IMG/VR virus record: IMGVR_UViG_3300044712_001255
Span: 248,001 to 312,000 of that record
Reading direction: 5' to 3' (one strand)
Length of the DNA stretch: 64,000 nt
Shown piece by piece: positions 11,165-32,517 of this stretch (position 1 is the stretch's first letter; each line of letters opens with the position of its first letter). The notes beneath the pieces are model-generated. The model did not search any database. It saw only the letters and a list, made by a program, of their open reading frames with translations, and was not told the DNA's origin. The position numbers and the translations under genes are program-made.

Positions 11165-11237
11165 GCACTAGTAACTCAATCGGTAGAGTAGACGGCCTTT
11201 AACCGTAAAGTTGAGAGTTCGAGCCTCTCCTGGTGCA
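11165..11237 (+). tRNA. tRNA-Lys(TTT), C33 variant
   Basis: Loop CCTTTAA. Confidence 0.8.
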
Positions 11238-11252
11238 CTTCAACAACGATTT

Positions 11253-11324
11253 GCTTCTGTACGCATCGGGTGAGGCGGGTGGATTGTCAATCCATTGAGG
11301 CGGGTTCGAGTCCCGTCAGAAGCG
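11253..11324 (+). tRNA. tRNA-Asp(GTC)
   Basis: GTGGA-TTGTCAA-TCCAT, G73. Confidence 0.9.
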
Positions 11325-11330
11325 CAATAC

Positions 11331-11403
11331 GTCCCTATAGCTCAACGGATAGAGCGCTTGGCTACGAACCAAGAGGTTGTAAGTTCGAATCTTGCTAGGG
11401 ACG
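11331..11403 (+). tRNA. tRNA-Arg(ACG)
   Basis: CTTGG-CTACGAA-CCAAG. Confidence 0.92.
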
Positions 11404-11404
11404 C

Positions 11405-11478
11405 TGCGGGTTAGAGAAGAGGCCCATCTCACTTGGCTCATAACCAAGAGACCGCCGGTTCGAATCCGGCATCCGCTA
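11405..11478 (+). tRNA. tRNA-Met(CAT), initiator-like
   Basis: CTCATAA loop, 1:72 mismatch; only two G-C pairs at base of anticodon stem. Confidence 0.8.
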
Positions 11479-11479
11479 C

Positions 11480-11554
11480 GACGCTGTAGCTCAAATGCAA
11501 GAGCAGCTGCAATTAAGCAGCAAGATGTTGGTTAAAATCCAGCTGGCGTCACCA
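11480..11554 (+). ncRNA. tRNA-shaped RNA with 6-nt non-canonical anticodon loop and encoded CCA
   Basis: Intact acceptor, D and T stems; GCTGC-AATTAA-GCAGC; ends ACCA. Confidence 0.65.
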
Positions 11555-11555
11555 T

Positions 11556-11631
11556 GGCCTTGTCGTCTATGAATGTAGGACGCCACCCCTTAGTCGAGGT
11601 GGAAAAACAGGTGCGAATACTGTCGAGGCCG
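11556..11631 (+). ncRNA. Glu-like tRNA scaffold with 10-nt anticodon loop
   Basis: GGCCTTG/CGAGGCC acceptor; CCACC-CCTTAGTCGA-GGTGG; degenerate T loop. Confidence 0.55.
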
Positions 11632-11637
11632 CAAATT

Positions 11638-11710
11638 GATTCTGTCGTCTATGAGTAAGACAATCCCAAATTGGTGGGAATAAAAGCTGATTCGTTGTCA
11701 GCCTGGATCA
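11638..11710 (+). ncRNA. tRNA-shaped RNA with non-canonical anticodon loop
   Basis: GTCT/AGAC D stem; TCCCA-AATTGG-TGGGA; GCTGA/TCAGC T stem. Confidence 0.55.
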
Positions 11711-11711
11711 C

Positions 11712-11785
11712 TGGCACATGATGTAGTGGTTTCTGCATGCTGGTCTGATAAATCAGTCGTACGAGTCCGATTCTCGTTGTGCCTA
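11712..11785 (+). tRNA. tRNA-Ile(GAT)
   Basis: CTGGT-CTGATAA-ATCAG; slightly atypical T loop. Confidence 0.75.
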
Positions 11786-11786
11786 C

Positions 11787-11858
11787 GGCCTTGTCGTCTA
11801 TCGGTAGGACAATTGGTTCTCAGCTAATAAAGGACGGGTTCGACTCCCTCCAAGGCTA
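11787..11858 (+). tRNA. tRNA-Glu(CTC)
   Basis: ATTGG-TTCTCAG-CTAAT. Confidence 0.85.
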
Positions 11859-11860
11859 CA

Positions 11861-11967
11861 CTCTTTTGCATTGTGGTCGTGTCTCGACGGGGACCAGCGA
11901 TAGGTTCAAATCCTATCATAAAATTTGGTAGCTGAGCGTTGGTTCGAATCCAACGGGTGTAAAAGAG
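11861..11967 (+). ncRNA. closed RNA with two tandem T arms
   Basis: 10-bp closing stem CTCTTTTGCA/TGTAAAAGAG; ATAGG-TTCAAAT-CCTAT and GTTGG-TTCGAAT-CCAAC. Confidence 0.6.
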
Positions 11968-11973
11968 ATTTTT

Positions 11974-12047
11974 GGTCCCATCTTCTAAATGGTCAGGATA
12001 CTAGACTTTCAATCTGGTAATGGCGAGTTCAAGTCTCCCTGGGATCA
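11974..12047 (+). tRNA. tRNA-Glu(TTC)
   Basis: CTAGA-CTTTCAA-TCTGG. Confidence 0.9.
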
Positions 12048-12133
12048 CCTCGAGTTTCCTTCATGAACTTTGTCGTGCCTGCGTGCGTGGAAAGCGACTA
12101 GATCACCTGGTGACAATCGGGAAAGACCGATAA

Positions 12134-12207
12134 CGGGGTGTACCTCAGTCTGGTAGAGGGCTTGTTTTGGGTACAAGACGTCGCACGTTCGATTCGTGTC
12201 ACCCCGA
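12134..12207 (+). tRNA. tRNA-Pro(TGG)
   Basis: CTTGT-TTTGGGT-ACAAG, C1-G72, A73. Confidence 0.9.
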
Positions 12208-12221
12208 CAACGAAAGATTAC

Positions 12222-12293
12222 ATGCCACTGGTGTTAATGGTAACATGTGGGTTTCCAAGTCCCGTGATGCGCGTTCGATTCGTGCGTGGCATG
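12222..12293 (+). tRNA. tRNA-Trp(CCA) (Gly TCC register less consistent)
   Basis: TGGGT-TTCCAAG-TCCCG, G73. Confidence 0.65.
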
Positions 12294-12360
12294 CTAAACA
12301 AAAATGTGTGATACAAGCTCACACATTAGGAATACAACATACAAACGCAAGGAAAAAGTC

Positions 12361-12876
12361 ATGAATATCAGCCAAGCTCTTCGTCGTATCTCAGTCATTA
12401 AGGGTCAGCTCGCAACCACAGCAACACGTTTCGCCAGTTCAGTCACGTGGATTGATGACGCAAAGCCAACATATTCGCTTGCTGAGTGCGATGTTGCGTG
12501 GGCTCGTCTCGTAGGTGAGCAGACGTCGCTTGAGGCCGCAGTGGCAATTGCCAATGCAACGAACAAGATCACCTATCGTGGTCAGGAATTCACGCTTGCG
12601 TTTGCCGTGAAGCAGTTGGCTGTTTTCAAGGCAAAGATTGCGCTCTTGCGAACCCTGAATTGTCAGGCGACTGCAGAACGCACCGATGTTACTCGTGATA
12701 CTGAGTACGTAAATGGAAATTACGTAACTGTCACTCGAGAGAAGAAGGTTCACTGTGCATTCACTGAGCGTGAGCGTGATACGAGTGTTCAGGTAGCGCA
12801 GACAGACTTTGACGAGCTCAACGCACTCGTCGAGGCGGCAAATCACACCATTCAGGTCGACCCTCAGGTCGTCTGA
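12361..12876 (+). CDS. helical/coiled-coil protein, DIP1984-like
   Basis: MNISQALRRISVIKGQL...IANATN...ELNALVEAAN resembles DIP1984-family pattern (recalled, not searched). Confidence 0.55.
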   Translation: MNISQALRRISVIKGQLATTATRFASSVTWIDDAKPTYSLAECDVAWARLVGEQTSLEAAVAIANATNKITYRGQEFTLAFAVKQLAVFKAKIALLRTLNCQATAERTDVTRDTEYVNGNYVTVTREKKVHCAFTERERDTSVQVAQTDFDELNALVEAANHTIQVDPQVV

Positions 12877-12883
12877 TGTGAGA

Positions 12884-13081
12884 TGCGCCGAAAGGGAAGT
12901 TGCTGTTGAAACCCTGTTGATTTAAAATCAACTCAACCCTAATAAGGAATGAAAGCTATTGGTATCGGTTCTGGCATCGCATTCAGCACTCAGCGTCCAG
13001 CATCTTTTCCTATCAGCTCATAGCCCTTAGCAGGTAGATTTCAGCAATCAGCAGTCAATTACAACACGCTTCCCTTGCGTT
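12884..13081 (+). ncRNA. structured RNA with 7-nt-period YAGC repeats
   Basis: Closing AAGGGAAGT/GCTTCCCTT; YAGC at 12984,12991,12998,13014,13021,13028,13042,13049. Confidence 0.6.
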
Positions 13082-13085
13082 GTAT

Positions 13086-13157
13086 GCGGTGATAGTTTAG
13101 TGACAAAACGGCAGGCAACCAAAGCCTGAGATCATGGGTTTGATTCCCACATCCGCG
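13086..13157 (+). pseudogene. degenerate Trp-like tRNA (loop AACCAAA)
   Basis: CAGGC/GCCTG stem, no U33, mismatched acceptor. Confidence 0.45.
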
Positions 13158-13269
13158 CTAAGTAACGAGAAAAATTATCGGGTGAAATACCCATATGCCT
13201 GATTGCGTAAGAAGGGTCGACACTTCTGCGATGGAGGTACAACGCCAGAGGAGCGTTAACGTGAAAGTT
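13157..13269 (+). ncRNA. AGUA/GAA-helix RNA
   Basis: AGTA-ACG (13161) ... CGT-GAA (13261), internal hairpins. Confidence 0.5.
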
Positions 13270-13270
13270 T

Positions 13271-13341
13271 GGGGCTTTCGTATAGCGGGATTACGCTGGC
13301 TTTGCAAGCCAGTCACACGGGTTCGAGTCCCGTAGGCTCCA
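13271..13341 (+). tRNA. tRNA-Ala(TGC)
   Basis: CTGGC-TTTGCAA-GCCAG, G3:U70. Confidence 0.92.
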
Positions 13342-13374
13342 CAAATCAACAATGACTGCGTTCAAAGTTGATCA

Positions 13375-13500
13375 ATTACGAGTAACTATTAAGCGGTGTA
13401 AATCCGCATTGTATGCAACGTCATCGACAGTTCGCCTCGATCGGGGTGACTGCCCTCTGCACGTTGACGTACTGGCCGGTGAGCCTAATGTGAAAGTAGT
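13375..13500 (+). ncRNA. AGUA/GAA-helix RNA
   Basis: ATTAC-G-AGTA-AC ... GT-GAA-A-GTAGT; GCGG-TGTAAAT-CCGC hairpin. Confidence 0.55.
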
Positions 13501-13505
13501 GTCAT

Positions 13506-13577
13506 GGGCCTGTAGTTTAATAGGGAAAATTCCTGCCTCGCACGCAGAAAACTCGGGTTCGAATCCCGATGGGTCCA
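13506..13577 (+). tRNA. tRNA-Ala(CGC)
   Basis: CCTGC-CTCGCAC-GCAGA, G3:U70. Confidence 0.88.
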
Positions 13578-13589
13578 CACAATCAACGA

Positions 13590-14630
13590 TCAGTTTGATA
13601 AGAGGTGCCTAAGAACGTCATTGTATGATTCAACCTTGACGTTTGACAATGCATTAAAGATTTCATCTTGCGTTGCCTTGTCTTTCACGTTCTGCTTGAT
13701 CCAATCAATCACTTGGTCCTTATTTACGCCGCCTTGCGTTTGTGATTGTGTACGTGAGCTGCTGTTGGTTTGTTGATTAGGTTGCTGTTCAGTAGACTCT
13801 TCATTAGACCGTTGTGATACTTGCGTATCAAAATTTTGGATCTCTTTGCCCACAGCTTGCATTTTTTCGATCATCGCTGCTAATTTGCCGCTTTTCACTA
13901 TTTGCGCAATTTCTCTTGCTATATTTGCATCAACGTTCATGCCAGCTTGCTTACCAGCTGACATTACAATTGATTGCAACGTATTACTTCCGTGTTGATC
14001 GCCTCGTGGCAATTCACTGCCGCCTGGTACCTTACCAGCATCTAGCGATGTTGCCTGCTTTGTTGGCCTTTGTGCTGTGATTTGTGGTTGTGGTTTTGGC
14101 TTTGGCGTCGCAGGTACAGGTTTCTTTCCAAACTTTGCATTTGCAAGTTCTTCATCTGATTGCACGCCACGTTCTTGTTCGTCTACTGCTTCCATTAGAC
14201 GACGAAACTTTGTGTGAAATGACTCATTGATTTCAGCAGCATCAACTTTTTGTGCAACAAGCTCGTAAAAATGCATACATTTCATGAACTCTTTTTCAAG
14301 AAGCTTGAAATCGCCGTCCTCGTCGTCAAAAATGTCCTTGGAAATACGACCTAAAAATCCTTTTATCTTATCAATGGTGCTTTTCTTATTAACTTGCTTG
14401 TACTTTGCGAATTTCCCTTTTATGTTATCAAGCGTTGTTGCAAGTTGATTTGCGATCGTTATTTGATCATTAGCTTTTAGTACGTCCACTGTTTGCTTCA
14501 CATTTTTGAAAAGCGCTTTGAATTTTGCAAATAACTCTTTATCGATTGCTTCATTCAATTGCTGACGAATGTTCTCATCGATCTTCAAAAGCTTTCGACG
14601 TTGCGCAAGCGTAAGTTTGCTGGTAGACAT
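13590..14630 (-). CDS. charged protein with Gln-rich linker (putative virion internal protein)
   Basis: IRQQLNEA and FRRLMEA motifs; ATAGTTA 10 nt upstream. Confidence 0.6.
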   Translation of the reverse strand: MSTSKLTLAQRRKLLKIDENIRQQLNEAIDKELFAKFKALFKNVKQTVDVLKANDQITIANQLATTLDNIKGKFAKYKQVNKKSTIDKIKGFLGRISKDIFDDEDGDFKLLEKEFMKCMHFYELVAQKVDAAEINESFHTKFRRLMEAVDEQERGVQSDEELANAKFGKKPVPATPKPKPQPQITAQRPTKQATSLDAGKVPGGSELPRGDQHGSNTLQSIVMSAGKQAGMNVDANIAREIAQIVKSGKLAAMIEKMQAVGKEIQNFDTQVSQRSNEESTEQQPNQQTNSSSRTQSQTQGGVNKDQVIDWIKQNVKDKATQDEIFNALSNVKVESYNDVLRHLLSN

Positions 14631-14878
14631 AGCGATATTCTAACTATTCGTTCGGTGATACACGATCAGTCTATGGCTTACTGTCAGCTTATGCAAGGAG
14701 AATACGTTAGGTGGCACGGGCAACTAGCCCTAGTTGTCTACGAATTTTGGGGCCTTGCAACGATTCGGTTGTGCGAGAAGCACTCGATCTACGAGGTTTT
14801 TTTGCACGATCTCAAACCTGTAACCCTTCAACCTGTCCGGTGTAATACCTGACTCAACGTGATAGGCTTGTCCTAGGC

Positions 14879-15256
14879 ATGGACACCACAACATACGTTT
14901 ATATCGCGCTTGGTGCAGTCGCCACAGGAACATCATTGTGGTGGGTAATTCGAACAATTCGTCGTCGATTGACGCGTCCTGCTGGTGGTTCACAGTCGGT
15001 GAACGTGAAACAGCTGCGTGTTCGACTTACAACGTTGACTGGCGAGATTTTTGATATCTCGTTTGAAGGCAAGGCATTCTACATCAATGACACAATCTGG
15101 ATGCAGACTGCTAAAGAAATTTTCAATGATTGGCGTGACGCAGGCGAACACGGTTTGTTTCGTGTTTCTCGTAACCAATGGATTGGCGCGCAGAACGTAA
15201 AGGAACTTCTCTTGGTGAAAGAGAGTGATCTTTTTATTGACGTGCCGTACTCTTGA
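14879..15256 (+). CDS. membrane-anchored hypothetical protein
   Basis: N-terminal TM; promoter GTGTAA(14840)-17-TAGGCT. Confidence 0.55.
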   Translation: MDTTTYVYIALGAVATGTSLWWVIRTIRRRLTRPAGGSQSVNVKQLRVRLTTLTGEIFDISFEGKAFYINDTIWMQTAKEIFNDWRDAGEHGLFRVSRNQWIGAQNVKELLLVKESDLFIDVPYS

Positions 15257-15258
15257 CG

Positions 15259-15287
15259 GTGTACAATCGCACACCGTGTATTATAAT
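15259..15287 (+). promoter_or_regulatory. putative phage promoter GTGTAC-17-TATAAT
   Basis: Perfect -10 hexamer with recurrent GTGTAV -35. Confidence 0.7.
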
Positions 15288-15318
15288 AGCAACCCAAAAA
15301 GAACAAGAAGGATAGAAA

Positions 15319-15705
15319 ATGGCAAAGAAGCTGAAGAAGAACGCAAAGTCCGAGACCGTTGTCGAGAACGTGGCCGCCGTCACTGTTGACGCTGCCCCTG
15401 CAAACCTGTTTGAGGCGTTCATTGATCTGAGTGATCCTGAGCTGTCTCAGGCAATCGAGCGGCTTGAGGCTGAGCGTAACAGCTGCCTGGCGCATCGAGA
15501 GGATCCTATGGAGATTGAGATTGAGAAGTGTTTCGCTCAGCGTGAGTGGAGACTGCGTGCTGAGCGTTGGAAGGCGCATTGCGCGTATCTCGATGCAGAC
15601 GCAGAGTCTCTTCGAGAGGATCAGTACCCGATCGCAGACCTCGATAATTGGGAGTTCGTCTCAATTTGCAACGGTTCGCGAGCGCCTCGCGTTCAGCGCG
15701 CCTAG
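15319..15705 (+). CDS. hypothetical acidic protein
   Basis: Strong SD AAGGA; 128 aa. Confidence 0.6.
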   Translation: MAKKLKKNAKSETVVENVAAVTVDAAPANLFEAFIDLSDPELSQAIERLEAERNSCLAHREDPMEIEIEKCFAQREWRLRAERWKAHCAYLDADAESLREDQYPIADLDNWEFVSICNGSRAPRVQRA

Positions 15706-15716
15706 GATTTCTTGAC

Positions 15717-16532
15717 ATGAAGCAAACGAGTAAAGAACCAAAGATAGTACAAACGTATCTCGACTCATTGACACGTTTGCCGCAGCTTTCGCACCCTGAT
15801 CTTGTGAACCTTTTCAAGGTTCTTGAAGATACTGAAGAGAAGCTTGCGGCAAAGGAACGAGCTCGCAAGAAGGTCATTGAGTGTAATCTTCGTCTTGTCG
15901 TATCAATCGCAAAGAAGTACTACAAGAACTACAAGTTGCCCATTGAAGACCTCATTCAAGAAGGCAACATTGGACTCATGAAAGCCGTAGAGCGATTTGA
16001 CTACAAGAAGGGTTGGCGGTTTTCAACGTACGCTACATGGTGGATTCGCCAAGCAATCGGTCAGCATGTTCAAAAGCGACGTCGAACCGTGCGATTGCCT
16101 GCGCATGCCGCTGCCGTTCAACGCAAGTTGATTCAGGCTGCTGATGATTTCAAGCAACTGCATGGTACTAATCCTTCGAGCGAAGAACTGCAGGAAGTCG
16201 TCAAGGCTTCAGAGACTGTGGTGCGAGCAACGATGTTTGCGTCTCGAGGAACTGTGTCATTGAATGATCCTGCGTATGCAGCTGCCGGTGGACCTACCAA
16301 GACAATTGCTGATGTTCTTGAGGATGAAGATCCGGGTGCTTGCCCATTCACCAACTGTGCTGACGTAGAGATTGTGAACATTGTTCGACAAATCATGAAA
16401 ACGTTGACGGTGAAAGAGTCTGCGATCCTACGTCTGAGGTTTGGCCTCATTGAGGATGATACGAATTCTGAAGAGTTCCCAATCACTCAAGATGAGATTG
16501 ACAACCTTGACGAAGGACGTGGTTTGACGTAG
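15717..16532 (+). CDS. sigma70-family RNA polymerase sigma factor lacking region 4.2
   Basis: NLRLVVSIAKKY, DLIQEGNIGLMKAVERFDYKKGWRFSTYATWWIRQAI; ends after LTVKESAILRLRFGL. Confidence 0.9.
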   Translation: MKQTSKEPKIVQTYLDSLTRLPQLSHPDLVNLFKVLEDTEEKLAAKERARKKVIECNLRLVVSIAKKYYKNYKLPIEDLIQEGNIGLMKAVERFDYKKGWRFSTYATWWIRQAIGQHVQKRRRTVRLPAHAAAVQRKLIQAADDFKQLHGTNPSSEELQEVVKASETVVRATMFASRGTVSLNDPAYAAAGGPTKTIADVLEDEDPGACPFTNCADVEIVNIVRQIMKTLTVKESAILRLRFGLIEDDTNSEEFPITQDEIDNLDEGRGLT

Positions 16533-16735
16533 CGATGGGCGGTGATGGATATGTATTATCTGTCATCGTTGCCATTTTCTGGAGTCAGCCATGAACTTTT
16601 CTGCTATCCTGGTCATAATTGGTCTCACATGCGCCGGTCTTAGCGCATTAGTTTTTACGTTACCGTTCATGGCCAGGATGCAGTGGTTCAAGGATCTTTT
16701 CATAGAGGAACAACCCGATATCGAAATAGTAGAAC

Positions 16736-17026
16736 ATGATGATGACGAATGAGATTACAGTTGGCATAGCTTTCATCATTGGCATTGCGTTGGGATATGT
16801 GGTGCGCTATGCAAGTGAATTCTTGACATCAAGAAAAGTACCAACACCAAAGCGCCTCAAAAAGGCAGACCTTGTAAAAGATATGCAAGATCGTATGCAC
16901 GATCGTCTCAATGAGATTGACTTGCCATTCGGTCGACCACGAAAAACAGAACATGCTCCGGTGACTGCGATTGGCAACGCTCGGGCAAGAACGATGTTGA
17001 TCAATAGAAAAGAAACAAAAGAGTAA
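16736..17026 (+). CDS. membrane-anchored hypothetical protein
   Basis: N-terminal TM. Confidence 0.5.
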   Translation: MMMTNEITVGIAFIIGIALGYVVRYASEFLTSRKVPTPKRLKKADLVKDMQDRMHDRLNEIDLPFGRPRKTEHAPVTAIGNARARTMLINRKETKE

Positions 17027-17028
17027 AA

Positions 17029-17328
17029 ATGAATCCAGGCAAGAAGTTCAAGGCGGGATATGCTACAGTTACAAGCGACAACGGTGGCGACAATTACCGT
17101 GAAATTGCCGAATTGATGACCCAGATAGGGTTCCCAATGAATCATTCATCTGCTCGTAATCACGTCATTAGGGCGATGCACAAGTTTGTGCTTGCATTTT
17201 GTCAAGCTCAAGGTATTGAATTCTCTGAAAAAGAGCAACTACGCATTGCTCGTGATCCTCGCTTTCAGGAGGCCATTTGCGATGTGATGCAGTACCTTGA
17301 GGCTGAGAAAGAAGATCGCCATATTTAA
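17029..17328 (+). CDS. helix-turn-helix protein resembling sigma region 4.2
   Basis: DNYREIAELMTQIGFPMNHSSARNHVIRAMHKF. Confidence 0.55.
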   Translation: MNPGKKFKAGYATVTSDNGGDNYREIAELMTQIGFPMNHSSARNHVIRAMHKFVLAFCQAQGIEFSEKEQLRIARDPRFQEAICDVMQYLEAEKEDRHI

Positions 17329-17332
17329 GGAC

Positions 17333-26119: not shown

Positions 26120-26121
26120 CA

Positions 26122-26212
26122 GAGCGCGGTAACTACGTTCGTTGTCATGGTTTGACAAGGAATTCTTTCAAAAATTCCTATTTTGGTTCGAATCCAAATA
26201 GGTGAAGCGCTC
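26122..26212 (+). ncRNA. tRNA mimic on GGUA/GAA helix, unit 2 (Glu-like core)
   Basis: GAGCGC-GGTA-ACT ... GGT-GAA-GCGCTC; D, anticodon-like (8-nt loop) and T arms. Confidence 0.7.
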
Positions 26213-26219
26213 AATCTTC

Positions 26220-26318
26220 AAACAAAAGTAACCTCACAAACGAAGTGTTGATAGTGACACAACTTGAGTTTAACAAGAAAAAGTAGGTGCAAGTCCTGCC
26301 GTGAAGGTGAAATTGTTT
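26220..26318 (+). ncRNA. tRNA mimic on AGUA/GAA helix, unit 3
   Basis: AAACAA-A-AGTA-ACC ... GGT-GAA-A-TTGTTT; loop AGTTTAA; T arm GTAGG/CCTGC. Confidence 0.7.
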
Positions 26319-26324
26319 CTTTTT

Positions 26325-26421
26325 CAACAAAGTAACTGTTTTCGTGTTGATTGATAATCATCTTAGCTTAAAACTAAGACAATCTGGTGAGACTCCAGAC
26401 TCGAGTTTAGGTGAAATGTTG
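26325..26421 (+). ncRNA. tRNA mimic on AGUA/GAA helix, unit 4
   Basis: CAACA-A-AGTA-ACT ... GGT-GAA-A-TGTTG; CTTAG-CTTAAAA-CTAAG; T arm TCTGG/CCAGA. Confidence 0.7.
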
Positions 26422-26428
26422 TACAAAC

Positions 26429-26505
26429 GTGATGAGTAACATACAATGTCAAGGTGACATCCACAAGATGTCATACGTGGTGCAAATCCCGGACGTGAAA
26501 ATCAT
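26429..26505 (+). ncRNA. reduced tRNA mimic on AGUA/GAA helix, unit 5
   Basis: GTGAT-G-AGTA-AC ... GT-GAA-A-ATCAT; GGTGCAAATCC T-loop-like. Confidence 0.55.
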
Positions 26506-26510
26506 ACGAT

Positions 26511-26581
26511 GCTGGTCTAGTATAGTGGCATTACAGCTGTTTCGTAAGCAGCCTACAGGGGTTCGATTCCCTTGACCAGCA
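26511..26581 (+). tRNA. tRNA-Thr(CGT)
   Basis: GCTGT-TTCGTAA-GCAGC. Confidence 0.88.
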
Positions 26582-26663
26582 CGATACTAAAAACACAGTA
26601 ACGAAAAAAAGCAATAAACGCTTTGAGAGATTATTGCTGAAGTGAAAATGAGAGTAGGTATCG
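26582..26663 (+). ncRNA. AGUA/GAA-type RNA without tRNA core, unit 6
   Basis: CGATACT/GGTATCG closing, AGTAAC 26597, GTGAA 26642, AGCAATAA/TTATTGCT hairpin; weaker flanking pairs. Confidence 0.4.
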
Positions 26664-26668
26664 ACGTC

Positions 26669-26741
26669 GCCCGTGTAGCTCAATTGGCAGAGCAAGCGCC
26701 CTGTAAGCGCGAGGTTAGGTGTTCGACTCACCTCATGGGCA
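26669..26741 (+). tRNA. tRNA-Thr(TGT), C33 variant
   Basis: Loop CCTGTAA. Confidence 0.82.
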
Positions 26742-26765
26742 TCAAGATCAACAATGATCTTTTAT

Positions 26766-26836
26766 GGACTGGAAGAGCAAACGGTTAGCCGACAGGTTGT
26801 GGCCCTGTCGTAGTGGGTTCGACTCCCGCCCAGCCC
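26766..26836 (+). tRNA. tRNA-His(GTG)
   Basis: ACAGG-TTGTGGC-CCTGT; atypical positions 8-9. Confidence 0.75.
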
Positions 26837-26838
26837 TC

Positions 26839-26921
26839 GCTGTCGTGGTGGAATTAGGCAGACACATCAGGTTGAGAGCCTGACGGTTTATACCATGCAG
26901 GTTCGACTCCTGTCGACAGCA
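26839..26921 (+). tRNA. tRNA-Leu(GAG)
   Basis: TCAGG-TTGAGAG-CCTGA, long variable arm. Confidence 0.92.
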
Positions 26922-26922
26922 C

Positions 26923-27006
26923 ACAACTGTGGCGGAATTGGCAGGCGCGCCAGACTTAGAATCTGGTGACCGCAAGGTCGTGGAGGTTCGATCCCTCTCA
27001 GTTGTA
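26923..27006 (+). tRNA. tRNA-Leu(TAG)
   Basis: CCAGA-CTTAGAA-TCTGG, long variable arm. Confidence 0.9.
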
Positions 27007-27014
27007 CGAGATAC

Positions 27015-27557
27015 ATGGCAAATCAATATTCTAAGTTTAAATGGGAAGATGAACGTCCATTTGAAGATCTGGGCCGAGTAAAACAACGTAACTTCCTAAT
27101 AAAAGAAGCGAATTTTAGTTGTTCTGCTTGCGGCTTCAATAAGTCAAGAGAAGACGGACGATCAATTTTAGAAATTCATCACATCGATGGGAATCATCAA
27201 AATAATGTTCGATCAAATTTGAAAGTGTTATGTCCAAATTGCCATGCCATGACGTTAAAATTCAGATTTTACGGAAAATCACATCTATCGTCAAAAGATC
27301 ATAGAGCTCGAACTATCAATAAAGAGCTCAGAATAAAACGTAAATTAGCGAGAGAACAACGCCAATCAAAAATTAGAGATCAGTTTTGTGAAACGATATT
27401 GTTATGTCATGAGACAAAAGAAATTGATTTCTCTAAATTTGGATGGGTATTACGTCTATCTGAGATGTTTGGCGTAACGCACCAAGCAATTGGTAGACGT
27501 ATAAGAAAATTGATGCCAGAATTCTACAATGATCATTGCTTCAAAAGGAAAGCATAA
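27015..27557 (+). CDS. HNH endonuclease
   Basis: CSAC...LEIHHIDGNHQNN..NLKVLCPNCH. Confidence 0.78.
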   Translation: MANQYSKFKWEDERPFEDLGRVKQRNFLIKEANFSCSACGFNKSREDGRSILEIHHIDGNHQNNVRSNLKVLCPNCHAMTLKFRFYGKSHLSSKDHRARTINKELRIKRKLAREQRQSKIRDQFCETILLCHETKEIDFSKFGWVLRLSEMFGVTHQAIGRRIRKLMPEFYNDHCFKRKA

Positions 27558-27562
27558 AATAC

Positions 27563-27642
27563 GGGACTCGCGGCTTATCCGGATGGTTTGCCGGAATCTG
27601 TCCTATGAACAGACGCCAATGGTTCAATTCCGACGAGTCCTA
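27563..27642 (+). tRNA. atypical tRNA-Ile(TAT)-like, C33, enlarged D loop
   Basis: TCTGT-CCTATGA-ACAGA; weak T stem. Confidence 0.5.
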
Positions 27643-27647
27643 CATAC

Positions 27648-27720
27648 ACCAACATGGCTGAGTGGTTGAGGCGCTCGCTTCATAAGCGAGTTTACGTGGG
27701 TTCGATTCTCACTGTTGGTA
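27648..27720 (+). tRNA. tRNA-Met/Ile2(CAT)
   Basis: CTCGC-TTCATAA-GCGAG. Confidence 0.85.
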
Positions 27721-27724
27721 CAAC

Positions 27725-28042
27725 ATGATAGCACAAAAAGCACGGTTGATGACTAAACTAGTCTCTCTATTGAGAAAGAAGTTGTTTGATAATTCACCTT
27801 TCATTGAAGAGGTGCTCACTCAACTCGACATATTGACTCTCGAGAGAGGCATCAAAGTATGCGTAGAAGATCAGTTGATCGTGGTGTATTTACCAAGCAA
27901 ACCGGGATTCAATCCAATTCCCGTCGCGGCTGGCGTGATGCACCAGGCTGACGTCATTTTTGAATATGAAGCTGGCACGGGACGCATTGTCAAGTGCCTC
28001 AAGCATCGTGAACGTAATCCAGAAGAATTCAATAACGTATGA
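27725..28042 (+). CDS. hypothetical protein
   Basis: 105-aa ORF coupled to next gene. Confidence 0.45.
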   Translation: MIAQKARLMTKLVSLLRKKLFDNSPFIEEVLTQLDILTLERGIKVCVEDQLIVVYLPSKPGFNPIPVAAGVMHQADVIFEYEAGTGRIVKCLKHRERNPEEFNNV

Positions 28043-28443
28043 AAATACTTGTTTGCGGCTCTAGACATTGGGATGACATCGAGACAATTGCGCGTGTGTT
28101 GGAGGGGTTACCCAAATCTGGTGTCACGATAATACATGGGGCGGCTCGAGGGGCTGACATGATAGCCGGAGAGGTGGCCAAGCAGTTTGGATGGAACGTA
28201 CGTGAATACCCGGCGCAGTGGGACAAACACGGTAAAGCTGCTGGACCTCTTAGGAATCAGCTCATGCTTGATCGTGAAAATCTACGAGACAATCCTATTG
28301 AACTGTGCATTGCATTTCATGATGAGTTGCACAAGCAAGAGGGCGGTACTTACGACATGGTGAGACGATCTGCAGCTCTTGGCATACCCGTTAGAAATGT
28401 GAGATCATCAAATGACTCAACAAATAACACGCTTCATCAATGA
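28039..28443 (+). CDS. SLOG-family protein (DUF2493/YspA-like)
   Basis: ILVCGSR, IIHGAARGAD, AAGPLRNQLM, AFH...GGT.DMV. Confidence 0.75.
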   Translation: MKILVCGSRHWDDIETIARVLEGLPKSGVTIIHGAARGADMIAGEVAKQFGWNVREYPAQWDKHGKAAGPLRNQLMLDRENLRDNPIELCIAFHDELHKQEGGTYDMVRRSAALGIPVRNVRSSNDSTNNTLHQ

Positions 28444-28876
28444 GTACGCATTTTTGAGCAGCTTTCATACGTCCACGGTGCGATGGGACGGTAGACTCTG
28501 GAAGTCGGTTGAACACGCGTATCAGGCAGCAAAGACGCTTGATGCCAAACAACGAGACATGATTCAGGCTGCAAAAACTCCTGGCGAAGCAAAGCGGATT
28601 GGGCAAGCTATCACGCTTCGACCTGATTGGGACGACGTAAAGTTGAACATCATGCGTGAATTGATTCATGAAAAGTTTATGAATCCTTTCCTGCGTCACA
28701 GGTTGCTTGAAACGGGTGAAGCAGAGTTGATTGAAATCAACTTTTGGAACGATAAATTTTGGGGCGTCTGTCGCGGTGAAGGAAAAAATCACTTAGGCAG
28801 AATTCTCATGGATGAGCGAGACAGCATACGAGAAGAATTGATCGCAGATAACACCACCGTGGAGGAACTTCGGTAG
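28412..28876 (+). CDS. NADAR family protein (YbiA-like)
   Basis: FLSSF, SVEHAYQAAK, AKRIG, LLETG, DKFWG, GKNHLGRILM. Confidence 0.85.
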   Translation: MTQQITRFINEYAFLSSFHTSTVRWDGRLWKSVEHAYQAAKTLDAKQRDMIQAAKTPGEAKRIGQAITLRPDWDDVKLNIMRELIHEKFMNPFLRHRLLETGEAELIEINFWNDKFWGVCRGEGKNHLGRILMDERDSIREELIADNTTVEELR

Positions 28877-28936
28877 ACTCGATAGACTCAGACTCTATTG
28901 TCGCAAGATGTGCAGGTTCGAATCCTGTCGGTGGTA
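28853..28936 (+). tRNA. tRNA-Leu(CAG), overlaps NADAR 3' end
   Basis: ATAGA-CTCAGAC-TCTAT, long variable arm. Confidence 0.85.
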
Positions 28937-28974
28937 CGAGTGTAGATACGTACAACATATTGTATCATGAGGTC

Positions 28975-29265
28975 ATGATGGAACAAGAAGACATGCAGAC
29001 GGTGAATGTGCCTGAGCGTCGACCTGACGCTGTCCTACTTGAGACTGGCGAGTTTGAAGTCGTTAGAAAGCTTCGCTCTCGCATCCTCGATCAACACGCC
29101 AAGATGTACCCGTGGGTGTATATCACCAGGGTTGGATACGGAGACGATGTGAAGTACGTCCTCTCGGTTGCGAATGGTTTCGGCGGAAAGCTGTCATCTA
29201 GCGAGCTTGAGAAGATTGCTGCCTCGGTCTCTGAAGAGCTGGAAAATCTCACGTTGCCTTCATAG
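28975..29265 (+). CDS. hypothetical protein
   Basis: ORF after promoter GTGTAG(28940)-17-TATCAT; stop inside tRNA-Arg. Confidence 0.5.
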   Translation: MMEQEDMQTVNVPERRPDAVLLETGEFEVVRKLRSRILDQHAKMYPWVYITRVGYGDDVKYVLSVANGFGGKLSSSELEKIAASVSEELENLTLPS

Positions 29266-29327
29266 TAAAACGGAAATAATGGTGCGCTTCGAACGCACAG
29301 TTCTAGGTTCGAATCCTAGTGAGGGCA
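29256..29327 (+). tRNA. tRNA-Arg(TCG)
   Basis: GTGCG-CTTCGAA-CGCAC. Confidence 0.85.
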
Positions 29328-29338
29328 CACCATTATTT

Positions 29339-29411
29339 CTCTTCGTAGTTCAGTGGATAGAACATCGCTTTCCTAAAGCGAATGTCATGTGTTCAAATCA
29401 CATCGAAGAGA
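29339..29411 (+). tRNA. tRNA-Arg(CCT)
   Basis: TCGCT-TTCCTAA-AGCGA. Confidence 0.9.
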
Positions 29412-29415
29412 CTAC

Positions 29416-29489
29416 GTCCCCATAGCTCAGCTGGATAGAGCGTCGGCCTTCTAAGCCGAATGTCGTAGGTTCGAATCCTACTGGGGATG
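29416..29489 (+). tRNA. tRNA-Arg(TCT)
   Basis: TCGGC-CTTCTAA-GCCGA. Confidence 0.93.
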
Positions 29490-29528
29490 CTAAGTGTAGA
29501 CGAACATAAAGTGTGGTAAGTTGAAATT

Positions 29529-29942
29529 ATGGAAACGTCAAATAGCAACATGGCGAACGTCATCATGGAAACTTGGACGGAATCCGAAAGCGGATGGGGC
29601 TGTCGTCCAGACGGATGTTCATTGCACCTCAATCTTGCTGATCTTGATGCTTACGTCAAGGAATATTGGGCAAAAATGCCTAAGGAAGTTCCGTATGAGT
29701 ATAGCACACCAGACGAAAGTCCTAAGTTGATTTCTATCCCAAGGGACAGTTCAGAATACAAACGCCTGTTGGAAACTTGCAATGGTGTTCGACTTTGTCA
29801 GGACGAAATCAATAAGCTACGTTATCCCAACGGGTGGAAACAAGGAGCACATGATGAAACAAACCCTCGCAAGATCGTTGATGATGTGTCTAGTAATGTT
29901 GTCACTCGTTCAACTGCTGACCAGCTGTTACGCAGAGTTTGA
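29529..29942 (+). CDS. hypothetical protein
   Basis: WTESESGWGCRPDG motif; promoter GTGTAG(29494)-17-TAAGTT. Confidence 0.5.
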   Translation: METSNSNMANVIMETWTESESGWGCRPDGCSLHLNLADLDAYVKEYWAKMPKEVPYEYSTPDESPKLISIPRDSSEYKRLLETCNGVRLCQDEINKLRYPNGWKQGAHDETNPRKIVDDVSSNVVTRSTADQLLRRV

Positions 29943-30065
29943 TTTTCCAATCAAGACTCCACGTACAGATCCTTGCACGTCAAAGACAGACGTGGCATAC
30001 GTGTACATCAATCCAACGTGTAGAAATCCTCGAATCATTGTTAGAAAGCCAGAATAGGAGAAAAC

Positions 30066-30305
30066 ATGGAAAAGAGTAAAAAGCAACAGGATATTGAAGG
30101 CAAGTTGGTGGCGTGGCGTAAGCTTACTCCCGCGGAGCAGCTCGCTGATTTGGACCGTCGCCTCGGTAAGGGCGTTGGCGCCGCAAAGCAGCGCGCTCGC
30201 ATTCAGGCAAAGCTCGATAAGCAGCCCGCCAAGGCTGAGGCGATTGCTACTGACGTTGTCAAGGAGCGTCCTCAGCGCCCGAAGCGGCAGAAGAAGGACA
30301 AGTGA
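30066..30305 (+). CDS. small basic hypothetical protein
   Basis: SD AGGAG; Lys/Arg-rich. Confidence 0.55.
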   Translation: MEKSKKQQDIEGKLVAWRKLTPAEQLADLDRRLGKGVGAAKQRARIQAKLDKQPAKAEAIATDVVKERPQRPKRQKKDK

Positions 30306-31363
30306 CAAATCGATCACTCACTGTCATTCAACAGGGTGCGCTTCGATGTGTCTCTTCTGAGGGATACAACTACACGTTTGATACCGAGACGGGTCGGTTT
30401 GCTCGATGGGGCAAGACTGCTAATGACGATCCCATCATGGCTCCACACCCAGAAATTGCAGATATTGAAGTAACCACTATCTGCGCTGGCGTTGGTGGAA
30501 AGCTGTGTGGGCACTGTTATAAGTCCAACACTCGCAGCGGATCGAACATGTCACTCGATACCTACAAGCGAGTTTTTGATCGCATCGCAGCGTCAGGCAC
30601 TCTCACGCAGGTTGCATTTGGCGCAGACAGCACTGGACGAGCAAATCCTGATCTCATTGAGATGATGAAATACACTCGTTCAAAGGGAGTTGTACCAAAC
30701 ATCACAATTGCCGACATTGATGACGACATGGCCCAGCAACTTGCAAGCGTTTGTGGTGCTGTGGCCGTGAGTCGATATGCTGACAAGAACTATTGCTATG
30801 ATTCTGTGGCGAGGTTGTCAGCAGCTGGTCTCAAGCAGATCAACATTCATTTGATGATCAGCCGCGAGACGTTTGATTGGGCATATGAGACGATCAAGGA
30901 CGTTCATTCTGATCCTCGACTAAAGGGGTTGAAGGCAGTAATCTTGCTGTCTCTCAAGCAAAAAGGTCGGGGAACTCGGTACAACACTCTCGTTCAGTCG
31001 CAGTTCGCAAAGCTTGTGCGAGAGTCCGTGGATTACAACGTTCAAATTGGATTTGACAGTTGCAGTTCATTGAAGTTCTTGAGAACACTCAAGAAGAATC
31101 ATCCGGATTACCCCCGCATCAAGCAGCAGGTCGAGCCGTGTGAAAGCACTCTGTTTTCAGTGTTTGTGAATCACAAGGGTGAGACTTTCCCGTGTTCCTT
31201 CACGGAAGGCACGCCAAATTGGGAAAGCGGAATTGATACACTTGCGTATGATGATTTCAATGATGTGTGGAATCACACCAGGATGCAAGACTTTAGGGCA
31301 AAATTGCTTGCGTCAGACAAGAATGAACATGAATGCCGAGAGTGCACGTTATTCAACGTGTGA
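30302..31363 (+). CDS. radical SAM protein with SPASM/twitch-like C-terminus
   Basis: CX7CX2C (CAGVGGKLCGHC), C..V..GETFPCSF, CREC. Confidence 0.85.
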   Translation: MTNRSLTVIQQGALRCVSSEGYNYTFDTETGRFARWGKTANDDPIMAPHPEIADIEVTTICAGVGGKLCGHCYKSNTRSGSNMSLDTYKRVFDRIAASGTLTQVAFGADSTGRANPDLIEMMKYTRSKGVVPNITIADIDDDMAQQLASVCGAVAVSRYADKNYCYDSVARLSAAGLKQINIHLMISRETFDWAYETIKDVHSDPRLKGLKAVILLSLKQKGRGTRYNTLVQSQFAKLVRESVDYNVQIGFDSCSSLKFLRTLKKNHPDYPRIKQQVEPCESTLFSVFVNHKGETFPCSFTEGTPNWESGIDTLAYDDFNDVWNHTRMQDFRAKLLASDKNEHECRECTLFNV

Positions 31364-31374
31364 AAGAAGGAAAA

Positions 31375-31911
31375 ATGAAGATTAGAGATGGTTTTGTAAG
31401 TAATAGCAGCTCAACGTCGTTCACTTGCTCAGTCACTGGCACAGTCCTCACGGGATATGACGGTGAATATGACGAAGCAATCTGTACTTGTCAGCATTGT
31501 GGTGCTGAATTTCTGGCGTCAGAGTTGTATACTCCCAAGCAACCCACTGAAGAATTTATGAAGATTGCTATTGCTGCTTCACGCAATGAATACGATGAAG
31601 ACGAAGACGACAATGTTGAGTCAAGCGCAATACCTGAGAAGCTGAGCGAACTTAAGAAAGCTTACAAGCTTGCAGTTGACAAGATCAAGTCTGGGAGTGG
31701 GAACACATACGTTCCAAAGGAAATGTGCCCAATTTGCACGCTTGATTACATTGATGATAATGATTTGCTTCATTATTTGATGGCAAAGACAGGCGTAGTT
31801 GACGTCTCTGAGATTTACGATGAGATCAAGGCAACTTTTCAGGACCATGATTTGTTGAAGAATTTTCTTGACACAATTGCAATCAAGAGGAGCAAGAAAG
31901 ATGAAGATTAG
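31375..31911 (+). CDS. MKIRDGFVSNSSSTSF-motif Cys-containing protein, paralog 1
   Basis: Conserved N-terminus plus three Cys pairs. Confidence 0.7.
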   Translation: MKIRDGFVSNSSSTSFTCSVTGTVLTGYDGEYDEAICTCQHCGAEFLASELYTPKQPTEEFMKIAIAASRNEYDEDEDDNVESSAIPEKLSELKKAYKLAVDKIKSGSGNTYVPKEMCPICTLDYIDDNDLLHYLMAKTGVVDVSEIYDEIKATFQDHDLLKNFLDTIAIKRSKKDED

Positions 31912-32437
31912 AGACGGATTTGTAAGTAATAGCAGCTCAACATCATTCACGTGTCAAATTTCCGGGCGTGCGTTAGCCGGTCGAGATGGTGAATATGAGG
32001 AAGGTACGTGTACGTGCATCAAATGTGGCACAGATTTTCTATCTCATTACGCACTTAAAGTTGACATTGATCAACTTTCTATTGCGCAAAAGCGTGACAT
32101 CTTGTCCGTAATGAATGAATCAAACTACGGCGGTGGCGCATTCGAAAATCTTGAAATTGACGATCCCAAGCAGATAATCAACGTGACGGATGATGTGATT
32201 ACGTCAACAATGATCGCCGTCAAGCAACAGATTGAAGATGGATATGAACACACCGACGTACACGAAGTTTTCTGTCCATGCTGCAATTTGACTCACATCA
32301 TTGATGCTGACGTAACTGATTATCTGATGGCAAAGTGCGGTTTCTTCACCAAAGATGCCGTACGAGATGAAATTCGTAGTGTTTTCAACTCACGAGAAAC
32401 ATTGCAAAACTTCACAAAGACAATGTTGCGTAAGTAA
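31901..32437 (+). CDS. MKIRDGFVSNSSSTSF-motif Cys-containing protein, paralog 2
   Basis: Identical first 17 aa to paralog 1, same Cys layout. Confidence 0.7.
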   Translation: MKIRDGFVSNSSSTSFTCQISGRALAGRDGEYEEGTCTCIKCGTDFLSHYALKVDIDQLSIAQKRDILSVMNESNYGGGAFENLEIDDPKQIINVTDDVITSTMIAVKQQIEDGYEHTDVHEVFCPCCNLTHIIDADVTDYLMAKCGFFTKDAVRDEIRSVFNSRETLQNFTKTMLRK

Positions 32438-32443
32438 CATTGA

Positions 32444-32517
32444 GTGCGGCGACTGTAGCTGGTGAAACTGCCTGCTCGACAAGCAGGATATGGTGGGTTC
32501 GATCCCCACGCTGCACA
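32444..32517 (+). tRNA. tRNA-Val(GAC), C33 variant
   Basis: CCTGC-TCGACAA-GCAGG. Confidence 0.75.

What the first reader, a model, noticed from the sequence alone, without database searches (positions are those of the whole stretch)
11165..32517. Repeated U33-to-C substitution across unrelated tRNAs
Lys(TTT) CCTTTAA 11165, Pro(GGG) TCGGGGA 23723, Thr(TGT) CCTGTAA 26669, Ile(TAT)-like CCTATGA 27563, Val(GAC) TCGACAA 32444. U33 is nearly invariant because it forms the anticodon U-turn. Five independent C33 cases suggest selection, for example escape from anticodon nucleases such as PrrC (Lys), or C-to-U editing by a deaminase.
Basis: partly seen in the sequence, partly recalled or inferred. Interest (0 to 1): 0.6.

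Follow-up and report, generated by a model that had tools for sequence, protein, structure and literature searches.

The report
C33 tRNA genes in jumbo phage
A 324-kb soil phage carries about 48 tRNA genes, and three or four of them have C instead of the textbook U just before the anticodon; in my samples about 3% of virus-encoded tRNAs show the same change, so it is not peculiar to this phage and no function is shown for it.

Summary
The window lies in a 324-kb jumbo-phage record from a rhizosphere metagenome. Between 9.9 and 35.3 kb it carries 48 tRNA calls covering all 20 amino acids.

C33 is real in three canonical tRNA genes: Lys(UUU), Pro(GGG) and Thr(UGU). It is also present in one marginal gene, Val(GAC). 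The fifth case, "Ile(UAU)", is not a credible tRNA. An independent assembly gives the same letters, and a second sample confirms Thr.

The trait is not special to this phage.
- In 1,722 other virus-encoded tRNAs, 3.1% have C33, almost always as the only departure from the invariant positions.
- It arose many times and favours certain isoacceptors: Ile-GAU, Val-GAC, Pro-GGG.
- The window's 4 of 48 is not significantly above this background (P = 0.06).
- C33 Val(GAC) is also a normal cellular gene (16 of 99 bacterial sequences).
- C33 Lys(UUU)/Thr(UGU) occurred in about 5% of viral genes but in none of 602 bacterial genomes.

These are most likely working tRNAs. C33 plausibly changes how host loop-directed enzymes see them, namely the t6A machinery and nucleases that cut beside position 33. 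Nuclease escape is untested. Editing has no support.

The parts
9926..35308 (+). tRNA gene islands of a jumbo phage: 48 calls (45 ARAGORN, 46 Rfam, union 48) covering all 20 amino acids. No CCA is encoded and many genes abut with 0-14 nt spacers. Islands lie at 9.9-13.6, 23.7-29.5 and 32.4-35.3 kb, separated by protein genes.
11165..11237 (+). tRNA-Lys(UUU) with C33 (base 11197), loop CCTTTAA. Otherwise canonical, with A73. It is the only Lys(UUU) gene in the genome.
   Evidence: (58.8 bits)
23723..23793 (+). tRNA-Pro(GGG) with C33 (base 23754), loop TCGGGGA. It has C1:G72 and A73 as in bacterial tRNA-Pro. In the MFE fold C33 can pair with G37 and U32 with A38.
   Evidence: (57.4 bits)
26669..26741 (+). 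tRNA-Thr(UGU) with C33 (base 26701), loop CCTGTAA. It has G1:C72, C2:G71 and A73. The same letters appear in a second sample.
   Evidence: (58.7 bits)
32444..32517 (+). Marginal tRNA-Val(GAC) with C33 (base 32477), loop TCGACAA. Position 8 is G and the D stem is poor. The same loop is found in cellular Val(GAC) genes of Bacteroidota and Planctomycetota genomes.
   Evidence: (32.5 bits)
It has an acceptor-like stem, a D-like hairpin and an anticodon-like hairpin with loop CCTATGA, but no T arm. It is probably a decayed tRNA gene and should not be counted as a C33 tRNA.

Best explanation
Lys(UUU), Pro(GGG) and Thr(UGU), and perhaps Val(GAC), are working elongator tRNA genes within a near-complete phage tRNA set. 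C33 is a discrete variant that recurs in virus-encoded tRNAs. It is not damage.

The proposed working is as follows. A pyrimidine at position 33 keeps enough of the anticodon-loop geometry for decoding; C33 is the natural state of initiator tRNAs of multicellular eukaryotes and, as shown here, of many bacterial Val(GAC) genes. What changes is the face of the loop read by host enzymes.

Two consequences are the most likely. First, the ANN decoders Lys(UUU) and Thr(UGU) would escape t6A37 formation, because E. coli TsaBCDE does not modify a U33C tRNA. Second, the substrate is altered for nucleases that cut beside position 33: PrrC and RloC cut at 33|34 and CdiA-CT(EC536) cuts at 32|33.

Shown: the C33 genes exist, are otherwise canonical, and belong to a pattern common in viruses. 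Inferred: that they are expressed and charged, that C33 changes modification or cleavage in this host, and that this is why C33 is kept.
For: The three genes score 57-59 bits on RF00005 despite C33. They keep every other invariant position and the identity elements A73, C1:G72 in Pro, and G1:C72 with C2:G71 in Thr (sequences).

Each is the genome's only gene for its anticodon. The codons they read are in normal use: AAA is 33% of Lys codons, ACA 33% of Thr, CCC+CCU 40% of Pro.

In 1,722 other viral tRNAs, C33 occurs in 54 and G33 in 4. The position-33 change is the sole departure from the invariants in 56 of 58, whereas T-arm departures mostly co-occur. So C33 does not mark decay.

C33 recurs in unrelated phages and in the same isoacceptors: Ile-GAU 10 of 44, Val-GAC 25 of 75, Pro-GGG 2 of 8. 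The window's C33 tRNAs are no closer to other C33 tRNAs than to U33 ones, at 59-71% identity, which points to independent origins.

A C33 Ile(GAU) gene has copies at 90% identity or more in 162 cultured-phage records.

C33 Lys(UUU)/Thr(UGU) makes up 6 of 114 viral sequences but was found in 0 of 602 bacterial genomes. The U33 form was present in 5 of 5 control genomes.

From the literature: C33 is an anti-determinant for E. coli TsaBCDE (PMC8887486). PrrC cuts 3' of U33 (PMC2610378). Phage tRNAs with anticodon-arm changes resist host tRNases (PMC10264068, PMC12409363).

The genome also encodes two PF09414 RNA ligases, a circumstantial hint that the phage meets tRNA damage.
Against: No relative of this phage with orthologous tRNAs could be found. 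Conservation of C33 in this lineage is therefore untested.

No RNA data exist, and the host is unknown.

The window's count is not above the viral background.

C33 shows no enrichment in t6A-type ANN decoders (22 of 596 against 32 of 1,126, p=0.38). The t6A effect therefore cannot be the general cause.

U33C does not protect against the one nuclease tested in the papers I could read, gamma-toxin (PMC2275089). The known PARIS escape changes lie at positions 39-41, not 33 (PMC12409363).

In Pro(GGG), C33 could pair with G37 and close the loop, which might harm function.
Confidence: 0.5

Rival explanations
1. Near-neutral drift. The tRNAs work, but C33 brings no benefit. Host tRNAs back up the phage set, so the mildest possible change at position 33 (U to C, a transition that keeps a pyrimidine) is simply tolerated and fixed now and then.
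For: The window's 4 of 48 matches the 3.1% viral background. Replacements are almost only C (54 C against 4 G), as expected if only the mildest change survives. There is no strong context signal: no enrichment among ANN decoders (p=0.38), C32 is as frequent as in the pool, and the G34 excess is modest (odds ratio 1.9, p=0.024). No conservation data exist for this lineage.
Against: Position 33 changes alone while the other invariants stay strict in the same genes (56 of 58). C33 concentrates strongly in a few isoacceptors and is kept over wide phage diversity, as with Ile-GAU in T5-like, T4-like, Bacillus and Xanthomonas phages. C33 Val(GAC) is fixed as the only Val(GAC) gene found in whole bacterial lineages. 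These facts suggest C33 is maintained rather than passing through.
Confidence: 0.3
2. The C33 genes are inactive or decaying copies in a bloated array.
For: The array does hold decayed or odd members. These are the tRNA-like element at 27563, a tRNA with a 6-nt anticodon loop at 11480-11551, two ARAGORN-only calls lacking U8 and A14, and Val(GAC) with G8 and a weak D arm.
Against: Lys, Pro and Thr have intact stems, all other invariants and high scores. Each is the only gene for its anticodon.
Confidence: 0.08
3. C33 is edited to U33 in the RNA by a cytidine deaminase.
For: The genome has one CDA-fold deaminase. C-to-U editing of tRNA anticodon loops exists in other systems (from my own knowledge, not tested here).
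Against: That deaminase lies directly after thymidine kinase and matches dCMP/dCTP-deaminase models best. That is the usual phage nucleotide-metabolism setting. C33 Val(GAC) is widespread in bacteria and viruses of many kinds, which would require an equally widespread editing enzyme. No RNA evidence exists.
Confidence: 0.03
4. Sequencing or assembly error.
For: This is a metagenome assembly of modest depth, about 11x in X1.
Against: An independent Logan assembly is identical over 23700-29452, and a second study's run is identical over Thr(UGU). The change hits the same functional position in four genes, which random error would not do.
Confidence: 0.01

Closest known systems
Large tRNA arrays of jumbo and other tRNA-rich phages (Xanthomonas phage XacN1, mycobacteriophage cluster C1, T5-like phages)
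   Same: Dozens of tRNA genes lie on one strand in islands interleaved with small ORFs. The genome also encodes RNA ligase, and a suppressor tRNA is present. XacN1 has the same layout, and the cultured arrays also contain C33 tRNAs.
   Different: There is no sequence relationship to any cultured phage. The nearest IMG/VR relatives, at 48% ligase identity, show no tRNAs in the recovered parts. The arrays compared are not orthologous, at 60-75% tRNA identity.
Phage tRNAs with anticodon-arm substitutions that resist host tRNases (van den Berg et al. 2023, PMC10264068; T5 tRNA-Lys/Thr/Asn against PARIS AriB, PMC12409363)
   Same: These are phage-encoded isoacceptors, among them Lys(UUU) and Thr(UGU), the two main AriB targets. 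Their anticodon loop differs from every cellular counterpart I sampled.
   Different: The published escape changes are at the cleavage or recognition sites, for example positions 39 and 41 for AriB. Position 33 is not mentioned in those papers. No cleavage test exists for C33, and the host and its nucleases are unknown.
C33 in initiator tRNA-Met of multicellular eukaryotes
   Same: It is a natural, functional tRNA with C33. C33 blocks t6A37 formation by bacterial and yeast enzymes (PMC8887486, PMC5041475).
   Different: Those are initiators of eukaryotes. Here the tRNAs are elongators made in a bacterium.
Cellular tRNA-Val(GAC) with C33, seen here in genomes titled Planctomycetota, Bacteroidota, Acidimicrobiia and others
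   Same: The loop TCGACAA is the same as in the window's Val(GAC). It is the only Val(GAC) match to the search pattern in four genomes checked.
   Different: The window's copy is a poor tRNA (G8, weak D arm). It is only 69-74% identical to the sampled bacterial genes, so it is not a recent capture from any of them.

Membership tests
tRNA (Rfam RF00005) | Cloverleaf that scores at or above the curated threshold of 29 bits | tested here: met
   Lys 58.8, Pro 57.4, Thr 58.7 and Val 32.5 bits. The Ile(TAT)-like element fails even at E<=10.
tRNA (Rfam RF00005) | Invariant U33 that forms the U-turn | tested here: not met
   C at 11197, 23754, 26701 and 32477. This is the finding itself. C33 also occurs in accepted tRNAs: eukaryotic initiators (PMC5041475) and bacterial Val(GAC).
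tRNA (Rfam RF00005) | Other invariant positions (U8, A14, G18G19, A21, G53, T54 T55 C56, A58, C61) and the expected identity elements | tested here: met
   Met for Lys, Pro and Thr, with A73 in all, C1:G72 in Pro, and G1:C72 with C2:G71 in Thr. Val(GAC) has G8 and a mispaired D stem.
Nuclease-resistant phage tRNA (as in T5 tRNA-Lys against PARIS, or the C1 mycobacteriophage tRNAs) | The anticodon arm differs from the host's cognate tRNA at the site the nuclease recognises or cuts | tested here: inconclusive
   The host is unknown. The C33 form of Lys(UUU)/Thr(UGU) was not found in 602 bacterial genomes of two phyla, while the U33 form was present in 5 of 5 controls. PrrC and RloC cut 3' of position 33 (PMC2610378). 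Val(GAC) C33 does occur in cells.
Nuclease-resistant phage tRNA (as in T5 tRNA-Lys against PARIS, or the C1 mycobacteriophage tRNAs) | Resistance to cleavage shown in vitro or in vivo, and rescue of infection | not testable with these tools
   This needs cleavage assays with C33 and U33 transcripts and plating tests.
C-to-U edited tRNA | A dedicated tRNA cytidine deaminase, and U in the mature RNA where the gene has C | tested here: not met
   The only CDA-fold protein is dCMP-deaminase-like and lies next to thymidine kinase. No RNA run holds the sequence, so the RNA letter itself could not be read.
tRNA pseudogene | Several lost invariants, broken stems, sub-threshold score | tested here: not met
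   Not met for Lys, Pro and Thr. Met for the element at 27563-27643. Partly met for Val(GAC).

The most novel reading that the evidence does not exclude
Position 33 is a general, so far undescribed site of virus-host conflict. On this reading, phages repeatedly switch U33 to C in chosen isoacceptors, here Lys(UUU) and Thr(UGU), forms I found only in viruses. The switch would make their tRNAs poor substrates for host enzymes that read or cut next to U33: PrrC/RloC-type anticodon nucleases, toxins cutting at 32|33, and the t6A machinery. The tRNAs would still decode.
Probability: 0.2. Interest if true: 0.7.

Novelty: new variant of a known kind. Interest (0 to 1): 0.4.

Why it matters
U33 is taught as nearly invariant.

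If C33 alters modification or cleavage, it would add a simple sequence marker for phage tRNAs built to survive tRNA-targeting defences. It would also give an easy test: swap one base and assay cleavage, t6A and plating.

If it is only tolerated, it sets a useful baseline. Scans should then not flag C33 in phage arrays as exceptional.

Tried and rejected
Relatives of this phage:
- Megablast and blastn of the array, and tblastn of a structural protein, against 50,697 phage records found nothing beyond generic tRNA similarity.
- Four proteins were searched in IMG/VR: the ligase, ORF 22609-23364, the SPASM protein and the 503-aa structural protein. Only the ligase had relatives, at 48% identity. 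Their records hold no tRNAs.
- A search for the Lys anticodon arm found only unrelated U33 tRNAs.
- Conservation of C33 in this lineage therefore could not be tested.

Orthology with the other jumbo phage that carries several C33 tRNAs (G005) is rejected: tRNA identity is 60-75% and different isoacceptors are affected.

Capture of Val(GAC) from a sampled bacterium is rejected: the best identity is 74%.

t6A avoidance as the general cause is rejected: ANN decoders show no enrichment.

The window as an outlier is rejected: P=0.06.

RNA evidence: no RNA run holds the stretch.

Not done:
- Pro(GGG) C33 in cellular genomes, because a specific enough pattern could not be written.
- The cellular C33 rate over all isoacceptors.
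- Host prediction.
- The large protein searches, structure prediction and complex prediction were not used, because the question is about RNA genes.


Full report
**What the window is**

The window is bases 248,001-312,000 of a 324,468-bp IMG/VR virus record that CheckV rates 86% complete. The sequence was found in two rhizosphere metagenome runs.

The right half encodes very large tail and baseplate-like proteins. Between 9.9 and 35.3 kb, all on the + strand, lie 45 ARAGORN tRNA genes and 46 Rfam RF00005 matches, a union of 48 calls. Two more lie elsewhere in the genome: a Met(CAT) and a suppressor with anticodon TTA.

All 20 amino acids are covered. None of the genes encodes CCA, and many abut with 0-14 nt between them. 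The islands are interleaved with small ORFs and with genes for a sigma-70-like factor, an ATP-dependent DNA ligase, a DUF2201 metallopeptidase-like protein and a SPASM-domain protein. This is the layout of the tRNA region of jumbo phages such as Xanthomonas phage XacN1.

**Check of the observation**

Three of the five cases are solid:
- Lys(UUU), 11165-11237: C33 at 11197, 58.8 bits.
- Pro(GGG), 23723-23793: C33 at 23754, 57.4 bits.
- Thr(UGU), 26669-26741: C33 at 26701, 58.7 bits.

They keep U8, A14, GG, A21, G53, TTCGA and C61. They also keep the expected identity elements: A73 in all three, C1:G72 in Pro, and G1:C72 with C2:G71 in Thr.

Val(GAC), 32444-32517, has C33 at 32477 but is marginal. 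It scores 32.5 bits, has G8 and a mispaired D stem, and ARAGORN calls it only at a lowered threshold.

The 'Ile(UAU)-like' element at 27563 is not a tRNA by any standard test.

The letters are reproducible. An independent Logan assembly is identical over 23700-29452, and a contig from a second study is identical over Thr(UGU).

**Is it unusual?**

Against cellular tRNAs, yes. Reviews list only eukaryotic initiators (C33) and Candida Ser(CAG) (G33) as exceptions to U33 (PMC5041475).

Against virus-encoded tRNAs, no.
- A second uncultured jumbo phage (IMGVR_UViG_3300037484_000235, locus L096) has 46 tRNAs. Four carry C33 (Lys-CUU, Glu-CUC, Val-GAC, Gln-CUG) and one carries G33. Its array is not orthologous to this one.
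- Thirteen cultured tRNA-rich phages hold 14 C33 tRNAs among about 269. Ile(GAU) with loop CCGATAA occurs in XacN1, Bacillus phage P59, Rhodobacter phage RcXuper, Vibrio phage IW18, Pantoea phage AAS21 and Klebsiella phage AM_K4. Val(GAC) with C33 occurs in a cluster C1 mycobacteriophage and in RcXuper. Pro(GGG) and Thr(GGU) with C33 occur in RcXuper.
- The AM_K4 Ile gene has copies at 90% identity or more in 162 phage records.
- I pooled 1,722 unique viral tRNAs, leaving out this genome and the isoacceptors used to fish the loci. Of these, 54 (3.1%) have C33 and 4 have G33.
- The window's 4 of 48 is not significantly above that rate (P=0.063).

**What kind of change it is**

In the pool, the position-33 change is the only departure from the invariant positions in 56 of 58 tRNAs. 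Departures in the T arm or D loop mostly come together. C33 is thus a clean single substitution in otherwise strict tRNAs, not a sign of decay.

It is nearly always C, which keeps a pyrimidine. It has hot spots:
- Ile-GAU: 10 of 44
- Val-GAC: 25 of 75 in a dedicated scan
- Val-CAC: 3 of 7
- Pro-GGG: 2 of 8
- Glu-CUC: 4 of 22

There is a modest excess before G34 (odds ratio 1.9, p=0.024). There is no excess among ANN decoders (p=0.38).

The window's Lys, Thr and Pro genes are no more similar to other C33 genes than to U33 genes, at 59-71% identity. The change has therefore arisen many times.

**Cells against viruses**

I ran the same Val(GAC) pattern over one genome per prokaryotic species. The record titles name Planctomycetota, Cytophagales, Cyclobacteriaceae, Sphingobacterium, Acidimicrobiia, Bacteriovorax and an alphaproteobacterial MAG.

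In four such genomes the C33 gene is the only Val(GAC) match to the pattern. Val(GAC) with C33 is therefore an ordinary cellular tRNA in some lineages. Viruses have it about twice as often (25 of 75, p=0.011).

Lys(UUU) and Thr(UGU) behave differently. The C33 form makes up 3 of 57 and 3 of 57 viral sequences. It was not found in 301 genomes of the phylum of a Cytophagales MAG, nor in 301 of the phylum of a Pseudomonas. The U33 form was present in 5 of 5 control genomes.

The two U34 cases in this window are therefore the more unusual ones. The two G34 cases, Pro-GGG and Val-GAC, belong to the common class.

**How it most likely works**

I take Lys, Pro and Thr to be working tRNAs. Each is the only gene for its anticodon, and the codons they read are in everyday use in the phage's long ORFs.

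What C33 does is inferred from published biochemistry:
- E. coli TsaBCDE and yeast KEOPS do not put t6A37 on U33C tRNAs (PMC8887486).
- An archaeal TrmJ loses activity on U33C, while the E. coli enzyme does not (PMC4105751).
- PrrC and RloC cut 3' of U33 (PMC2610378).
- CdiA-CT(EC536) cuts between 32 and 33 (PMC11724271).
- Yeast gamma-toxin is indifferent to U33C (PMC2275089).
- Phage tRNAs with changes in the anticodon arm are known or proposed to resist host tRNases (PMC10264068, PMC12409363).

The genome also encodes two RNA-ligase-family proteins. This hints that the phage meets tRNA damage.

My best reading (0.5) is that C33 is a maintained variant that changes how host loop-directed enzymes treat these tRNAs. 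The main rival (0.3) is that it is merely tolerated. I cannot separate the two for this genome because no relative with orthologous tRNAs exists in the collections.

Editing is unlikely. The only CDA-fold deaminase sits next to thymidine kinase and matches dCMP/dCTP deaminase models.

One caution applies to Pro(GGG). C33 can pair with G37 and U32 with A38, leaving a 3-nt loop in the MFE fold. Function may therefore depend on m1G37.

**Comparison with what is known, and novelty**

The object is a phage tRNA array, a known kind. The idea that phage tRNAs carry anticodon-loop changes to evade host tRNases is published.

I found no mention of position 33 in those papers. Full-text searches for C33, U33C or 'position 33' together with phage tRNAs found no paper on the subject. 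Subscription journals are not covered by these searches.

I therefore file the finding as a new variant of a known kind. The instance in this window is ordinary for tRNA-rich phages. The general pattern may be worth a proper census: C33 as the leading isolated exception in viral tRNAs, its cellular occurrence in Val-GAC, and the virus-only C33 forms of Lys-UUU and Thr-UGU.

**Limits**

The frequencies are therefore sample estimates.
- IMG/VR contigs include prophage ends that carry host tRNAs.
- The pooled loci are not phylogenetically independent.
- Cellular absence is 'not found in those searched'.

Noticed in passing
window 11480-11551 (+): A tRNA (RF00005, 44.7 bits) that directly abuts Met(CAT) and has a 6-nt anticodon loop, AATTAA, on a perfect 5-bp stem. 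ARAGORN cannot assign an anticodon. It may be a loop-deletion pseudogene or an odd decoder.
   Followed up: partly
genome G000:C1:313008-313079 (-), i.e. L495:1008-1079, about 1 kb beyond the window's end: A well-formed suppressor tRNA with anticodon TTA, which reads UAA (63.2 bits, loop CTTTAAA). TAA still ends 71 of 227 long ORFs, so there is no sign of genome-wide recoding. XacN1 also carries tRNA-Sup genes.
   Followed up: partly
loci L250, L266, L280, L284, L294, L296, L298, L300, L312, L316, L317 and others; genomes G010-G013: Bacterial tRNA-Val(GAC) genes with C33 (loops TCGACAA, TCGACAC, TCGACAT) in genomes titled Planctomycetota, Bacteroidota, Acidimicrobiia and Bacteriovorax. They make up 16 of 99 sampled sequences, and in four genomes checked they are the only Val(GAC) match to the pattern. 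This is an exception to 'invariant U33' in cellular elongator tRNAs.
   Followed up: partly
L103:17872-17947, L118:2803-2877, L119:13677-13751, L123:5165-5240, L126:13138-13213, L128:5205-5280, L129:1006-1081: tRNA-Ile(GAU) with loop CCGATAA (C33) in cultured phages of very different families and hosts: Xanthomonas, Bacillus, Rhodobacter, Vibrio, Pantoea and Klebsiella. The anticodon arm is often identical while the acceptor stems differ. Copies at 90% identity or more occur in 162 phage records.
   Followed up: partly
window 10596-10739, 11331-11551, 11712-11859, 24957-25103, 26766-27007, 34966-35111, 35140-35308: Runs of two or three tRNA genes with no base between them, and no encoded CCA in any gene. 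Maturation must rely on exact RNase P and 3'-end processing plus CCA addition.
   Followed up: no
window 11871-11963 and 24690-24770 (+): Two ARAGORN-only calls, Leu(CAA) of 93 nt and Arg(CCT) of 81 nt. Both lack U8 and A14 and do not reach the Rfam threshold. They are dubious or decayed tRNAs, and canonical copies of the same anticodons exist at 35140 and 29339.
   Followed up: partly
window 23748-23764 (anticodon arm of Pro-GGG): In the MFE fold C33 pairs with G37 and U32 with A38, giving a 7-bp stem and a 3-nt loop. Decoding may depend on m1G37 keeping the loop open.
   Followed up: no
window 15648-16532, 17821-19149, 19539-21179, 30302-31363 (+): Protein genes sit between the tRNA islands: a sigma-70 region 2/3 protein, an ATP-dependent DNA ligase, a DUF2201 metallopeptidase/VWA-like protein, and a protein with a SPASM iron-sulfur domain. 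The last could be a radical-SAM RNA or peptide modifier, but this was not examined.
   Followed up: no
genome G000:C1:115179-116045, 162202-163227, 143499-144576 (loci L493, L494, L492): Two RNA-ligase-family (PF09414) proteins of 288 and 341 aa. Also a thymidine kinase immediately followed by a CDA-fold, dCMP-deaminase-like protein.
   Followed up: partly
window 29272-29470 and 26884-27082: Contig depth in both runs spikes to hundreds or thousands over Arg(CCT)/Arg(TCT) and Leu(TAG). Many short contigs of other organisms match these conserved tRNAs at 85-95% identity. This is cross-mapping, not copy number.
   Followed up: no
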